A stretch of 64,000 nucleotides of DNA from Convolutriloba macropyga (lineage: Eukaryota): the NCBI RefSeq assembly GCF_964194025.1, contig NC_134471.1:39990001-40054000 (forward strand). The letters are read 5' to 3'. Numbering within the stretch: the stretch's first letter is position 1; each line of letters starts with the position of its first letter. The notes beneath the pieces are model-generated. The model ran no database searches. It saw only the letters and a list, made by a program, of their open reading frames with translations, and was not told where the DNA came from. Below, in pieces: positions 10,960 to 63,993 of the stretch. The translations under genes and the position numbers were made by a program.

Positions 10960-11119
10960 ATGAAAATTGAGACAATTTATTTCAACACATTCTGCCTAAT
11001 TTTGGCAGCTGTTGTTCCAAGAAATTATGGAGAAAAATCAGATAACACAACTCAAAACTGCACCACTGGCAGAAACATCTCTGGTCTCATTCTCCAACCA
11101 AATGGAAAATGTGCACCAG
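10960..11119 (+). CDS. Orphan type-I membrane glycoprotein paralog A, exon 1 (putative signal peptide)
   Basis: MKIETIYFNTFCLILAAVV...NCTTGR..GLILQPNGKCAP|G with a phase-1 GT donor at 11120; homologous to 45070 and 63015. Confidence 0.8.
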
Positions 11120-11539
11120 GTGTGTAGTCTTTTAACCCCCCAACCCCGGGCCACCAACCACATAATTGCCTGTCCCGCAACCATACCAAGACACGTATGA
11201 CGTTCATGGTAACTCGATGAGCGTATTTATGATAAACACATGAAAACTTCAACTAAACAAAAAAGGCGAGATAAATGTTGTAGTATAAGTTTTAAAGGAA
11301 ATAATTTCCACTGATCTGCTAGAATTTTATTTATAAACAAGCATCTGAAAAAAAAACTTTTTGGCTGTCACAAACTTTCTGTGTGAAAAATTTGTAGTGG
11401 GAAAAAATATTATCTTAATTCGTTTAACATACGCAGTGACATAAAAAAAAAGAGCCTATCCATTAATTAGAAAAGTTAACCTAACCTAAAGTTTTAACCA
11501 AACGCTATAAATGTTTATGCAGTCATAGACTCGGAGAGT

Positions 11540-12005
11540 GGTGTAGGACAATTTACCAAATGCCATTATACCCACTGCCATTTTACCCAACCTGCCATTT
11601 TACCCAATGACAACTTACCCAATTTACCTTATTGTTAAAATCGTCAGAACGACTATTTAGCCAACTATATAATTTAATGGCCCGTGGGACTTGATATAAA
11701 ACTGTCACAGCCAAACATGGGATTATATTGTCCACATAAACTTTTTAAAACATCTTGTACTAGCGACTGCTAAATTGTAATCGGATAATTGAACGAAAAG
11801 ATCAAAGAGCATTGGTTAAGTTGGTATTGGCTAAAATGGCATTGAGTAAAACGGCAGGTTGGGTATAATGGCATTCGGTAAAATGGCTGGTAGGTAAAAA
11901 TGCATTGGGCAAAATGGCAGGTTGGGTATTATGGTATTGGGTAAAATGGCTGGTTGTGTATAATAGCCTTGGGTAAAATGGAATTGGGTAAATTGTCCTG
12001 TAACC
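11540..12005. mobile_element. Foldback/MITE-like non-autonomous DNA transposon in intron 1 of paralog A
   Basis: Inverted termini (AGGACAATTTACC ... GGTAAATTGTCCT). Subterminal arrays of TGCCATTTTACCCAA in opposite orientation at the two ends. Possible degenerate 8-bp TSD (CGGAGAGT / CGGATAGC). Confidence 0.75.
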
Positions 12006-12545
12006 CGGATAGCAACCGTGTAGCAGACGTGCACGCTTTTAAGTGTTTTAGTGGTTACCAGAGTTAGTGTTTTGGGGGTTCGGGTATCTCATTGCTATTA
12101 CAGTTGTTGCGTATGCCATACATGTCCAGCTGACCACAAATTCTACAATAGATCTCTTGTAATTAGATGTGCAGATTTTATGGAGCAGATAGATGCAATT
12201 AATTTTTGTCTTGATAGCAGGGAACTATGAGCAATAAGAACTAGCCTCTGTGGTCAGAAAAACAGGGATAGGGGTCTTAACAATAAAGCTGTTTTAGCGG
12301 GGGAAATGGGGGTTGGGAAATTAGTTTCGGTCACACTTCACTCTTGGCGAGATTATATTTAATTTGTAACCGTATATAAAGTCTCTTAGTTATATCGGAA
12401 AAACACTTAGCTGAGAGGCACAATAAATGTTTGAGAGTTGAAACTATTTAGTAAATTTAAAATTATGCAAAATCAAGGTTTTTGTAATTTTAACTAGTAC
12501 ATGTTCATATATAGCTGGAAACCGCATTGCCTGTAAATGTTGCAG

Positions 12546-12681
12546 GTTTTGCGGGTGATGAGTGCAAATGGAGAGGATCCAGTGCCAACTTGGGGCCACC
12601 CCCACTATTCATCCCAAAGTCACTGAATGTTACCCAAAATGTACCTGCCAATTTGCTCTGCCTCAGCAATCTTCAAACTCG
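12546..12681 (+). CDS. Paralog A exon 2
   Basis: TGCAG acceptor, GTTAGT donor. GFAGDECK...LGPPP...LNVT...NLLCL. 136 nt, the same length as paralog B exon 2. Confidence 0.85.
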
Positions 12682-13147
12682 GTTAGTGTCAAACTCGGTC
12701 ACTACATTCTGATTACCAGAACGAAAATGAACTAAATGCAAAACGTACAATAAAATTCCAAACCTACATAAAAGAAATTCAAAAATGTTTTTTGCAGGAA
12801 CTAGGCTTTATCAAGGTATTATTCGTAGAACCAACGAAAAAAGAGTCCAGTTTTGAAGATATCTGATTCAGTACCGCATGGGTCTAAAATCAGATCCGAT
12901 ACTGTCCGGCATCTTCAAAACTGGACTCAGGCCTGGCATGTTCTACAAAATATGGGCTAGTTTGAACAGGCAAGTTTTGTCTTTTCATTGGGTTTTTCTT
13001 TCTTTTCGAATCCTTTGATTTTATCAGTAATATCCCGAAGTTATTATCAAGGCAAGAAAGTGGTAGACACCTATACAAAAAAACAATCTATATGAAAAAT
13101 AGAACTGTATGGACAAAGTTTCCGAAAAGAAACTATTTGAATTTCAG

Positions 13148-61100: not shown

Positions 61101-61200
61101 ATATGTGACGTGATGTTAATTGGTGTATTGTTCGTTGTTATGATGAATTCAAAATTGTTGTGCTTTAGAAATGTCCAATGCGAAACCAAAACCAATTGCA
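58200..61200 (+). mobile_element. Heavily decayed CR1/L2-group LINE ORF2 (APE + RT)
   Basis: LLYRPPS, FSDHYA, SNYRPISLLP, FIDLQKTFDTVDH, VLHGSVLGPLLFLLYI, LFVDVT; 3' stem-loop at 61047-61084. Boundaries are approximate. Confidence 0.85.
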
Positions 61201-63014
61201 TTATAAAAAGAAAATTAGCACTTTAGCAATTACTCATGTCATTGCTCACGAAAACAACCAAGTCTCTGAATTTGGTCGAATCTGATTAGAAATAAAATTT
61301 GTGCAGCAAAGAGATATGTTAGGAATAAAATGAAATAAGGTCAAATTTATATTCAAAATTGAGGAAGTGAGTTACTTTTATTATTAGCTACAAAATGTAA
61401 GTCTTTTCACAAGATATGAGTAAACTGTTTCCACATTATTCAATATTTGTTTTCCATCGAAGAAAATAATTACTAAACCTGAAAAATGGCGACAAAAATG
61501 AGTCAAATGTTTCTAAAATAAACGCAATTTTTTTTTTCAAATTTGTCATTTTGGACACGTAATGATGAGGGCATTTACTCAAAGGTTCTTAATCAGCCAA
61601 AAGCAACTAATCAGTAATCAGCCGAAGTCAACGCTGTTGAAAAAGATTGTAGAGAGCAACCTAAAGTCATCGAGAATCAAATTTACTGAAAAGGAGGCGC
61701 CATTGATGCAAAAAAAGTCAAGCAAGGAGGCCGGATTTTTTTATTGGAAAAACAACAGACAGAAAAAACGAATCACCTTGATCATGGGCTGTCATTTTTC
61801 CGATACCTAAGTGCAGATAAAATGACAAGTTGTTCTTATGTATTCTCGTTAATCGTGGTGCTTTCTACAAAAAATCAGTGCAACGGTACACTGGCGAAGG
61901 ATTTTGAACTAATCAAAAATCAAATATTTCGAAGAATTTATATGTTATTAGATGTTGTTATACATTGCTGGTTCTTTTTATAGGTTTCTTCCCCAATTAT
62001 ATTCTGACTTGCGTACGTCATTTTATATTTTTTGGCAATAATACAATTGTGTATGAACGGTTGCCGGGTAATCATACTTTGAGCATACAAGATTACTTTG
62101 TTATCATAAATTGGTCCTAAATGATATCCCCAAATTAATAACGAGGTCATAATGTTCTTTGCTTTTTATGATATCTATAAAAGGATCGTGCCGGATATCA
62201 CGGTGATCACTCAGAAACAAATGTTTCCATAAAAATTGAAATCGTACAAGGACAGTAAAAAATTGCGTATGATAAGCATGTCATCATTTATGAGGTTTGT
62301 AAAATTACAAAAGAATGCCCACCCTGAAAATATGTGCAGTTCTAACTATAAAATTTCATTTCTCATTTGACTAGTAAAATTTGTGTATTTAAATACCAAC
62401 CAAAAGAACAACATGAATTTTATTTTGCAAAAGGACCGAGATTCCTGGCCAAAACTTTAGGGAATCATTTTTCATCACTTCTGAAAAGCACTAAAAATAT
62501 CCAGATTGCGACATTATGGCGAATACTTGGCCATAGCTGTGTGTGTACAAAAAATGGAAGGCGTCACATTCATATGTTTACGTCAATAGCCTAGCCAAAA
62601 ATAATCTGACAGAAAACTTACGTCAACTCTTTATCTATGTTCACATTCTGTTGCAAAAATAAATGCACGAAAATGCTGCTAATGGTAAACATTTTTTGGC
62701 TAATGCCACAAAACAAACCAGAGTCATTTGTGAAACTTCTAAAATATTTGAAAATTTTGATTATGATTTTATCCTATCTTTTACACAATCGATAACTTAG
62801 GATAAATTTTTGCCGAGTTGAAAAAATTTATTGTGGATGATCTTATGAGGTTGCAGAAACAGCCTCAGGTAAATAAAAAACCATCTTATTCGTGGCGACT
62901 TTAAGATTTTACATGGTAATTTAGCATAAAATTATTAACCTTTCGGACGTGCGAGGCCCGGGAAATATTCTAGTTGATATCATCTATCGTGAATCATCCT
63001 CGTCTTATCTACAA

Positions 63015-63183
63015 ATGGAGATCCTTTTGGCAACCGTTTTGTTTGCTTCCTTGATCGAATGTTGCAATAGCAGCATCAATACGTTTGAAGAGCGACTACT
63101 GGGGAATTACGTTCAAAACTGCACCCAAAATCGTGTTCACTTGGGTTCATTTATACTTCACAGATCAGGACTTTGTGAAAATG
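63015..63183 (+). CDS. Paralog C exon 1 (signal peptide)
   Basis: MEILLATVLFASLIECCNS...QNCTQNR..GSFILHRSGLCEN|G with a phase-1 GTACGT donor. Confidence 0.82.
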
Positions 63184-63860
63184 GTACGTTATTACACGAA
63201 AAAAAAATTCGTCCCCTCTATCATTATATCTGCAGTACTAAAAAAAAAGAGAGCTTCAGTTTGGAAACGTGACTCTTAAATGGAAACGTGTTTTGTGTGA
63301 GCTAAAGCTGACTCTTGTTTTAAAAAAAGAAAGATCTTTTCAGTTTGCCCCCCCCCCCCCCCCCCCCAGTATGTTATGCACCCTCCACTTACAGAGCAAG
63401 GGCCATTACATAGTAAATCATCATGTAAACAAAATACGGCTCGTGCGTCTGGGGGTGAAAATAATAGATCCAGTTTTCCTAAATGTCAATGCCGAGCTGT
63501 CATAGAGTAATAGATTCATATACAGACATCTCAACCGCTATAGGACTTTTTTGTTATGATTCCACGGATAAAATTCGGATCTGAGATCTGTGTATATTCA
63601 GGTTATACTCTATGAGTTAACCTTAAAAAACTTTTCTCTGCGGCAAATTTCGATCCACATTGATCAAGTTCTTGGATCGTTGTTAATATAATGTATGAAC
63701 TGTATGATATAATATAATACAGTTACATAAACTGTAATATAATGTATGATAAAGAGCCATATATGGTAGCTAACACCATCACGAGATGTTAAAGAGAAAT
63801 CATAAATTTCTTTAAGCTATTAATATTTTTCTAGCGCACCATTGCATTTCTTCCTTTCAG

Positions 63861-63993
63861 GATTTGACGGAGATGTGTGCAAGGTACATCCGAGGCCGTA
63901 TGCGAAACCAGCGCCACAGTTAGAAATGTCCCACTTCAAAGTGACCAAGATAACCGAGTACAACTTGATCTGCCTAGAGAACATCCACATCAA
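63861..63993 (+). CDS. Paralog C exon 2 (gene continues beyond the window)
   Basis: TTTCAG acceptor. GFDGDVCKVHPRPYAKPAPQLEMSHFKVTKITEYNLICLENIHIK with a phase-2 GTAAGA donor. Not present in the ORF track. Confidence 0.85.

What the first reader, a model, noticed from the sequence alone, without database searches (positions are those of the whole stretch)
10960..63993. Hidden tandem array of a divergent orphan family of single-pass membrane glycoproteins (at least 3 paralogs)
Seen: joining exons 10960-11119/12546-12681/13148-13353/24479-24867 gives an open 296-aa protein (A). Joining 45070-45223/48957-49092/52054-52262/52641-53029 gives an open 295-aa protein (B). C begins at 63015-63183/63861-63993. 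Intron phases (1,2,1) are identical, as are two exon lengths (136 and 389 nt). Architecture: hydrophobic N-terminus; CxxG[FY]xGDxC spanning the first splice junction (like the last loop of an EGF repeat); six aligned extracellular Cys in A and B; conserved sequons (NxT in exon 1, NVT, ND[ST], NxT in the stalk); a conserved FNDxERPRTPE block; a P/S/T stalk; a TM helix with YIGFFAP; and a ~30-aa basic-then-acidic tail. A and B differ at roughly half of their positions by eye and C is more distant, yet the frames stay intact among dead TEs, which implies purifying selection. I recognise no known family. Inference: a tandem, fast-diverging ectodomain array is the pattern seen for invertebrate immune, allorecognition, gamete- or symbiont-recognition receptors and ligands, so this may be an undescribed cell-surface recognition system.
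Basis: partly seen in the sequence, partly recalled or inferred. Interest (0 to 1): 0.78.

Follow-up and report, generated by a model that had tools for sequence, protein, structure and literature searches.

The report
Three orphan acoel membrane glycoprotein genes
Three neighbouring genes of the acoel worm Convolutriloba macropyga encode small cell-surface glycoproteins with one fibronectin-type-III-like domain and no detectable relatives; they are real and under selection, but RefSeq already lists them as uncharacterised proteins, and nothing found here points to a fast-evolving recognition system.

Summary
C continues beyond the window as a five-exon, 272-aa gene (XP_075243207.1). So the array is not hidden. 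A profile search of the 1.18-Gb assembly finds exactly 13 exon hits (4+4+5), meaning three copies and no more.

Pfam, PDB sequences, a 5.8-billion-cluster word search and an exhaustive HMMER search with the exon-4 profile found no relatives outside this species.

AlphaFold models of A and of B's ectodomain agree on a seven-strand beta-sandwich (residues ~72-200). It resembles FN3 and Ig-like domains only generically (Z 6-8). The N-terminal CxxG[FY]xGDxC hairpin is EGF-like in motif only.

The alternate haplotype carries intact A' and B' with the same splice sites. dN/dS is 0.39 and 0.24 (pooled p=1e-4), and 0.29 between A and B, so selection is purifying, not diversifying.

I could reach no RNA data, so splicing and expression remain untested here. 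Best reading: a lineage-restricted trio of type I surface glycoproteins that bind something at the cell surface. Their role is unknown.

The parts
10960..11119 (+). Gene A (LOC142337671) exon 1: start codon, signal peptide, N-terminal sequons, Cys34, Cys51; ends in phase 1 inside the CxxG|F motif
   Evidence: profile hit E 1.1e-19
12546..12681 (+). Gene A exon 2 (136 nt): rest of the Cys hairpin (Cys60), PPP linker, first two beta strands (Cys92); ends in phase 2
13148..13353 (+). Gene A exon 3 (206 nt): central strands of the beta-sandwich, FNDSERPRTPE block, Cys155; 100% identical between the two haplotypes
13458..24248 (-). About 10.8 kb Pao/BEL-type LTR retroelement insertion that inflates A intron 3. 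It is absent from the alternate haplotype, where the intron is 329 nt.
   Evidence: Pfam Peptidase_A17 9e-48 and DUF1759 4e-12 on minus-strand ORFs; synteny breakpoints
24479..24867 (+). Gene A exon 4 (389 nt): last two beta strands (LWITPLPAVFTIPP..PIQF), Cys211, short S/T-rich linker, TM helix (about residues 244-266, window 24706-24774), 30-aa tail, stop
45070..45223 (+). Gene B (LOC142338428) exon 1
48957..49092 (+). Gene B exon 2 (136 nt)
52054..52262 (+). Gene B exon 3 (209 nt)
52641..53029 (+). Gene B exon 4 (389 nt): last beta strands, linker, TM helix, tail, stop
63015..63183 (+). Gene C (LOC142337672) exon 1 (169 nt)
63861..63993 (+). Gene C exon 2 (133 nt). The gene continues beyond the window at window-equivalent 68907-69112, 69785-69921 and 72942-73115 (L013 5907-6112, 6785-6921, and 9942-10115 running into L014).
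   Evidence: the reconstruction is identical to P0003/XP_075243207.1

Best explanation
A, B and C are three tandem, same-strand paralogs on chromosome-scale scaffold C4 of Convolutriloba macropyga. They form a lineage-restricted (orphan) gene family. Each encodes a type I membrane glycoprotein of 272-296 aa. The parts, in order, are: a cleavable signal peptide; a short, poorly ordered N-terminal segment with sequons and a conserved disulfide hairpin (CxxG[FY]xGDxC, the same motif as the last loop of an EGF repeat); one seven-strand FN3/Ig-like beta-sandwich of about 130 residues (residues ~72-200); a glycosylated linker that is short in A and B and almost absent in C; one TM helix; and a tail of about 30 residues with no catalytic or known signalling domain. 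Shown here: the gene models, the copy number, the conservation of splice sites in three paralogs and two haplotypes, purifying selection, and the absence of detectable sequence relatives. Inferred: the fold, from AlphaFold models built on a three-sequence alignment. Also inferred: the function. These are most likely passive cell-surface binding proteins (adhesion molecule, ligand or co-receptor subunit) that act through the beta-sandwich and the N-terminal hairpin and signal, if at all, through partner proteins. The duplications are old (dS between A and B about 1.3, against 0.06 between haplotypes). The three genes then sub-specialised. TE insertions have stretched the introns without harming the exons.
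For: Exons, splice sites and frames are verified. The proteins are identical to independent RefSeq Gnomon models. The whole-genome profile search gives exactly 13 exon hits, 4+4+5. The alternate haplotype has intact A' and B' with identical splice sites, and intact exons 1-2 of C'. dN/dS is 0.39 (A/A'), 0.24 (B/B') and 0.29 (A/B); pooled Fisher p=1e-4. Two AF2 models give the same strand order, with core pLDDT 70-91. The full structural scan puts FN3 and Ig-like domains on top in both models: IL-17RA D2 Z 8.3/7.7, then GH2 Ig-like domains, IL-12R, LIFR, gp130 and fibronectin at Z 6-8, rmsd about 3 A over 90-108 residues. A hydrophobic N-terminus, a single TM window and 4-7 sequons per protein are present. 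No Pfam hit reaches its cut-off, no PDB sequence hit, no relatives in three word-based searches, and only self-hits in the exhaustive HMMER search with the exon-4 profile.
Against: No RNA evidence was obtained. The only runs found hold the locus as DNA, so splicing and expression rest on comparative evidence and on Gnomon models whose support I cannot see. The structure models rest on a three-sequence alignment; overall pLDDT is 54 and 68, and Z values under 8 are common for any beta-sandwich. The exhaustive search covered only exon 4; residues 25-170 were searched only by word-sharing methods. How well the databases cover other acoels is unknown to me, so 'orphan' could partly reflect sampling. 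The function is inferred from architecture alone.
Confidence: 0.7

Rival explanations
1. One reading: the trio is a fast-diverging cell-surface recognition system (immune, allorecognition, gamete or algal-symbiont recognition), and ectodomain diversity is the functional read-out.
For: The proteins are surface glycoproteins with an Ig/FN3-like ectodomain in tandem paralogs that differ strongly (29-47% identity). Allelic amino-acid differences cluster in the N-terminal third of A (12 of 15) and of C (7 per 100 residues), with local dN/dS about 0.6. The host is a photosymbiotic acoel that takes up Tetraselmis anew after sexual reproduction (bioRxiv 10.64898/2026.03.06.710013) and reportedly lacks canonical immune signalling pathways (PMC12849515).
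Against: There are only three copies in 1.18 Gb. dN/dS is below 1 everywhere it was measured. B has one change in its first 100 residues. Allelic dS of 0.061 is of the order of the 3.65% genome-wide k-mer heterozygosity and lies within the local non-coding range of 1.7-10%. A exon 3 is 100% identical between haplotypes. The paralogs are old rather than recently diversified (dS about 1.3). No expression or localisation data exist.
Confidence: 0.1
2. The proteins are membrane-anchored precursors of EGF-like ligands (as with TGF-alpha, Spitz or neuregulin), released by cleavage near the membrane.
For: The conserved CxxG[FY]xGDxC motif matches the C5-C6 loop of EGF repeats. The protein-language-model neighbours of A are all EGF-containing clusters, including delta homologs, gurken-like and tomoregulin (score 0.77-0.81). 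The best Pfam row is EGF_PEAR1L.
Against: The module has three Cys, not six. The Pfam score is 12.2 bits against a cut-off of 37.5, E 0.19, for A only. Atlas scores near 0.8 are reached by a third of shuffled proteins. The segment is modelled with pLDDT 25-46. The largest and best-conserved part is the beta-sandwich, which EGF-family ligands lack.
Confidence: 0.05
3. The genes are annotation artefacts or decaying pseudogenes that happen to keep open frames.
For: No RNA holder was found for the B region. The region is TE-rich, with large polymorphic insertions in the introns.
Against: Thirteen exons keep open frames, canonical splice sites and identical intron phases in three paralogs that diverged to dS above 1, and in two haplotypes. 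Non-synonymous change is significantly depleted (p=1e-4).
Confidence: 0.03

Closest known systems
Single-FN3 type I membrane proteins (such as FNDC4/FNDC5-irisin) and FN3 modules of cytokine receptors (gp130, IL-12R, LIFR, G-CSFR) and of IL-17 receptors
   Same: Signal peptide, one seven-strand FN3-like beta-sandwich, TM helix and short tail. The structural matches have Z 6-8.3 and rmsd 2.7-3.9 A over 90-108 residues in both models. Irisin (4lsd) scores Z 6.0.
   Different: There is no sequence similarity: Pfam fn3 does not appear even at E<=10, and aligned identity is 4-14%. The sandwich is about 130 residues, longer than a canonical FN3 of about 95. There is no WSxWS motif, no second domain of a cytokine-binding module, and no SEFIR or box1/2 tail. 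There is an extra N-terminal Cys hairpin.
EGF-like domain (Pfam clan EGF)
   Same: The C-x2-G-[FY]-x-G-D-x-C motif equals the C5-C6 loop of EGF repeats, and it is invariant in all three paralogs.
   Different: Only three Cys lie in that segment, not six. All Pfam EGF models score below their cut-off. The segment is not confidently folded by AF2. An intron splits the motif itself.
Invertebrate variable recognition gene arrays (Hydractinia Alr, Botryllus FuHC/BHF, sea-urchin Trf/185-333, mollusc FREPs). This comparison rests on my own knowledge.
   Same: Tandem genes for surface proteins with Ig-like folds in a marine invertebrate.
   Different: Those systems are defined by many copies and/or extreme allelic polymorphism with diversifying selection. 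Here there are three copies, dN/dS is 0.24-0.39, and allelic divergence is no higher than in the neighbouring non-coding DNA.
Other orphan single-pass membrane protein genes noted in this genome by the scan (s1-208251, s1-254629, s1-214602)
   Same: Genes of the same species for predicted cell-surface proteins with no recognisable relatives. At least one (s1-208251) is already in RefSeq as an uncharacterised protein.
   Different: They are unrelated in sequence: the own-genome profile search finds only A, B and C.

Membership tests
EGF-like domain | Six cysteines forming three disulfides (C1-C3, C2-C4, C5-C6) | tested here: not met
   Only three Cys lie in the N-terminal module (A: C34, C51, C60).
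EGF-like domain | Score above the gathering threshold of a Pfam EGF model | tested here: not met
   The best row is PF23301 at 12.2 bits against a cut-off of 37.5, for A only; B and C have none.
EGF-like domain | C5-x2-G-[FYW]-x-G-x2-C6 terminal loop | tested here: met
   CAPGFAGDEC, CELGYVGDKC and CENGFDGDVC are aligned in A, B and C.
Fibronectin type III / Ig-like beta-sandwich | Seven-strand two-sheet sandwich superposable on solved FN3 domains | tested here: inconclusive
   Two AF2 models give the same seven strands. FN3 and Ig-like domains fill the top of the full PDB scan at Z 6-8.3. However, Z under 8 is common background, Foldseek found nothing at E<=1e-3, and the alignment has only three sequences.
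Fibronectin type III / Ig-like beta-sandwich | Sequence match to Pfam fn3 or related models | tested here: not met
   No fn3 or Ig row appears even at E<=10.
Class I cytokine receptor | Two-domain cytokine-binding module with a WSxWS motif and a box1/box2 tail | tested here: not met
   There is a single sandwich, no WSxWS in A, B or C, and a tail of about 30 aa. The 1-2-1 intron phases resemble the pattern an earlier scan note gives for cytokine-receptor genes (s1-214602), but the predicted domain runs on into exon 4.
IL-17 receptor family | Cytoplasmic SEFIR domain | tested here: not met
   The tail is about 30 residues with no Pfam hit. The similarity to IL-17RA D2 is structural only (Z 7.7-8.3).
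Variable recognition-receptor arrays of invertebrates | Many paralogs and/or diversifying selection (dN/dS > 1) or hyperpolymorphism in the ectodomain | tested here: not met
   There are three copies. Ectodomain dN/dS is 0.58 (A), 0.26 (B) and 0.21 (A vs B). Only two haplotypes from one laboratory culture were available, so population polymorphism is untested.

The most novel reading that the evidence does not exclude
The trio could be an acoel-specific surface recognition module. In this reading the poorly ordered, glycosylated N-terminal third (signal-peptide end to Cys hairpin) is the specificity determinant. Most allelic amino-acid differences of A and C lie there, including the loss of a sequon in A'. 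The conserved beta-sandwich and TM helix would be the scaffold. It might be used in uptake or positioning of Tetraselmis symbionts, or in self/non-self contact in an animal that lacks canonical immune signalling.
Probability: 0.08. Interest if true: 0.6.

Novelty: new member of a known kind. Interest (0 to 1): 0.25.

Why it matters
If the reading is right, this is one more lineage-restricted family of small surface glycoproteins built on a common beta-sandwich. That is useful for annotating the C. macropyga genome: three 'uncharacterized protein' entries gain an architecture. It also gives candidates for acoel cell-surface biology. The locus shows how coding exons survive in a region with very high structural heterozygosity: introns differ about 30-fold in length between haplotypes because of retroelement insertions. 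It would matter more only if expression or knock-down tied the genes to symbiont handling or self-recognition. Nothing here supports that.

Tried and rejected
1. Pfam on single exons and on full proteins gave nothing above cut-off.
2. A PDB sequence profile search gave only chance TM matches to GPCRs, E>0.6.
3. Three word-based homolog searches (P0003, alignment A3, P0008 residues 25-215) returned only self. A and B were invisible there because their 90% clusters are represented by 123-aa exon-4 fragments outside the length range.
4. The exhaustive HMMER search with the exon-4 profile returned only self-hits, plus a bacterial protein with repeated 'WITSNPAIA' stretches (probably Ig-like repeats; domains not checked) at E 6.5e-4. 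I rejected that hit as a chance match to 'WITxLPA'.
5. ESM Atlas searches by features gave EGF-type leads at 0.77-0.81 for A, nothing for residues 66-212, and glycophorin- or TMIE-like small TM proteins for exon 4. All are below the level that means anything.
6. Foldseek against the PDB gave C2 and Kir-channel sandwiches at E 1.5e-3 to 3e-2 and TM about 0.2-0.3, rejected as non-specific. The Atlas shape search gave TM below 0.5.
7. RNA evidence: the one run search returned only DNA holders. Laying their contigs showed both haplotypes but no transcripts.
8. Literature: no paper holds the LOC or XP identifiers, and the acoel immunity paper has no relevant terms.
9. I tried to recover exons 3-5 of C' in the alternate haplotype by walking along the contig. 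I stopped after three look-ups because a Pao element in intron 2 pushes them out of reach.
11. The spliced proteins were never typed in. All work used window references or RefSeq protein ids.
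Full report
**Observation.** A gives 891 nt and an open 296-aa protein. 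B gives 888 nt and 295 aa. Every intron starts with GT and ends with AG. The phases are 1, 2, 1, and the shared exon lengths (136 and 389 nt) are as stated. C's two in-window exons are also correct.

Using the assembly beyond the window, I found the rest of C. Exon 3 is 206 nt, exactly as in A. Exon 4 is 137 nt and ends at a consensus AAG|GTAAGT donor. A fifth exon encodes a TM helix and an acidic tail. The result is a 272-aa protein. The only qualification is that several 'conserved' features hold for A and B but not for C: FNDxERPRTPE, YIGFFAP, and the NVT and ND[ST] sequons.

**Identity and annotation.** The window is G000:C4:39990001-40054000 of a 1.18-Gb assembly. An exhaustive HMMER search with the exon-4 profile returned a 272-aa protein identical to my model of C. 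A cluster look-up then showed that all three genes are RefSeq models of Convolutriloba macropyga:
- A = XP_075243206.1 (LOC142337671, 296 aa)
- B = XP_075244304.1 (LOC142338428, 295 aa)
- C = XP_075243207.1 (LOC142337672, 272 aa)

All three are named 'uncharacterized protein'. No paper in the searchable library mentions these identifiers.

**Copy number.** tBLASTn-type searches of the whole assembly with exon 3 and exon 4, and a profile of the three full proteins, find 13 exon matches. These are the 4+4+5 exons of A, B and C, plus one chance hit at E 1.7. The family has three members, spanning about 62 kb on one strand.

**Relatives elsewhere.** None were found:
- Pfam gives nothing above cut-off. 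The best row is EGF_PEAR1L at 12.2 bits against a cut-off of 37.5.
- The PDB sequence search gives only chance TM matches.
- Three word-based searches of 5.8 billion clusters return only self.
- The exhaustive search of 1.84 billion representatives with the exon-4 profile gives only self, plus a bacterial protein with repeated 'WITSNPAIA' stretches that matches 'WITxLPA' by chance.

Two caveats apply. Only exon 4 was searched exhaustively, and I could not measure how well other acoels are represented in these libraries.

**Fold.** I ran two AlphaFold2 predictions. A full-length gave pLDDT 54 overall and 70-87 in the core. B's ectodomain gave pLDDT 68 and pTM 0.62, with 70-91 in the core. Both give the same order of seven strands between residues ~72 and ~200. 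The first ~70 residues and the segment before the TM helix are disordered. The strands encoded at the start of exon 4 (LWITPLPAVFTIPP and PIQF) are the most conserved stretch across all three paralogs.

The full structural scan of PDB representatives ranks FN3 and Ig-like sandwiches first for both models:
- IL-17RA D2: Z 8.3 and 7.7
- Ig-like domains of GH2 enzymes
- IL-12 receptor, LIFR, gp130, G-CSFR and fibronectin: Z 6-8, rmsd about 3 A over 90-108 residues, 4-14% identity

Foldseek finds nothing at E<=1e-3, and the Atlas shape matches stay under TM 0.5. This supports 'FN3/Ig-like beta-sandwich' as a fold class. It does not support membership of any family.

The N-terminal CxxG[FY]xGDxC motif is the C5-C6 loop of an EGF repeat in pattern. 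But the module has three Cys, not six, is not confidently folded, and is supported only by weak language-model neighbours.

**Selection and polymorphism.** A 389-kb ENA contig (ERZ25071359) is syntenic with the window at 92-97% identity. It carries A' and B' with the same splice sites and open frames. DNA contigs from the sequenced sample hold both forms at similar depth (for example two 139-nt contigs over 10939-11077 with 0 and 9 differences). The genome note reports an assembled alternate haplotype and 3.65% heterozygosity (PMC13650328). I therefore read this contig as the other haplotype.

Nei-Gojobori estimates:

| Comparison | dS | dN | dN/dS | Amino-acid changes |
|---|---|---|---|---|
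| A vs A' | 0.061 | 0.024 | 0.39 | 15 |
| B vs B' | 0.061 | 0.015 | 0.24 | 9 plus a one-codon indel |
| A vs B | 1.3 (saturated) | 0.38 | 0.29 | not applicable |

The pooled depletion of non-synonymous changes between haplotypes has Fisher p=1e-4. In A, 12 of the 15 changes lie in residues 1-96 (local dN/dS about 0.6), and exon 3 is 100% identical. C' exons 1-2 are intact, with 7 changes in 100 residues. Nothing exceeds neutrality. Allelic divergence lies within the non-coding divergence measured in the flanks and in A intron 2 (1.7-10%). This is purifying selection with a relaxed N-terminal third. It is not the signature of a diversifying recognition system. With two haplotypes from one clonal laboratory culture, population polymorphism cannot be judged.

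**Surroundings.**
- A's intron 3 is 11,125 nt because of a Pao/BEL-type LTR retroelement of about 10.8 kb on the minus strand (Pfam Peptidase_A17 and DUF1759). The alternate haplotype lacks it, and its intron is 329 nt.
- B's introns 2 and 3 also differ several-fold in length between haplotypes.
- Further Pao, LINE-endonuclease and RT fragments lie between the genes.
- The upstream neighbour ends with the last exon of an MFS sugar transporter.

**Expression.** This is the main gap. The single run search found only DNA holders for the B region. No junction could be tested. The evidence for splicing is comparative: thirteen exons keep their frames and sites across three old paralogs and two haplotypes. 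The Gnomon models agree.

**Interpretation.** The best-supported reading is a lineage-restricted trio of type I membrane glycoproteins. Each has one FN3-like domain capped by an EGF-loop-like disulfide hairpin, and a short tail without known motifs. Such proteins usually act by binding partners at the cell surface, as adhesion molecules, ligands or co-receptor subunits. I take that as the most likely mode of action (an inference, not shown).

An EGF-ligand-precursor reading gets about 5%, and an artefact or pseudogene reading about 3%.

**Verdict.** These are already-annotated orphan membrane protein genes, of a kind other notes of this scan also report in this genome. They now have a probable fold and evidence of constraint.

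Noticed in passing
window 13458-24248 (minus strand ORFs 14071-20482): A Pao/BEL LTR retroelement insertion of about 10.8 kb sits in A intron 3. It is present in the primary haplotype only; the alternate haplotype has a 329-nt intron. Its ORFs are split into several pieces.
   Followed up: partly
L016 247-6189; L021 14620-20138: The alternate haplotype carries Pao elements with long open ORFs (1980 aa; 985 aa plus more than 1304 aa) upstream of A' and inside C' intron 2. Neither is at that place in the primary haplotype. This insertion polymorphism suggests the family was active recently.
   Followed up: no
L021 3319-3461 versus 10355-10523: The alternate haplotype has a tandem duplication of about 7 kb upstream of C'. 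It includes a truncated copy of C exon 1 (first 143 nt, then unrelated sequence with an early stop). The complete C' exon 1 follows 7 kb later.
   Followed up: partly
window 11488-12075 (A intron 1): This is a very high-copy repeat: summed contig depth is 1e4-1e5, against about 50-100 for the flanks, with many inverted and skipping joints. It is probably a MITE-like element. The alternate haplotype's intron 1 is 660 nt against 1426 nt here.
   Followed up: no
window 1102-1644 (+): An open frame matches the C-terminal third of Pfam Sugar_tr (E 3.4e-10). It is probably the last exon of an MFS sugar transporter gene just upstream of gene A.
   Followed up: no
window 52054-53029 and 49093-52053 versus L017: B intron 2 is 2961 nt in the window and 481 nt in the alternate haplotype. 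B intron 3 is 378 nt against 1597 nt. Structural heterozygosity inside one gene is large while the exons stay 95-100% identical.
   Followed up: partly
protein clusters: In the 90% clusters, the full-length RefSeq proteins A and B are represented by 123-aa exon-4 ORF fragments from an ENA assembly. Length-filtered homolog searches therefore cannot return them. This database quirk can make annotated eukaryotic proteins look absent.
   Followed up: yes
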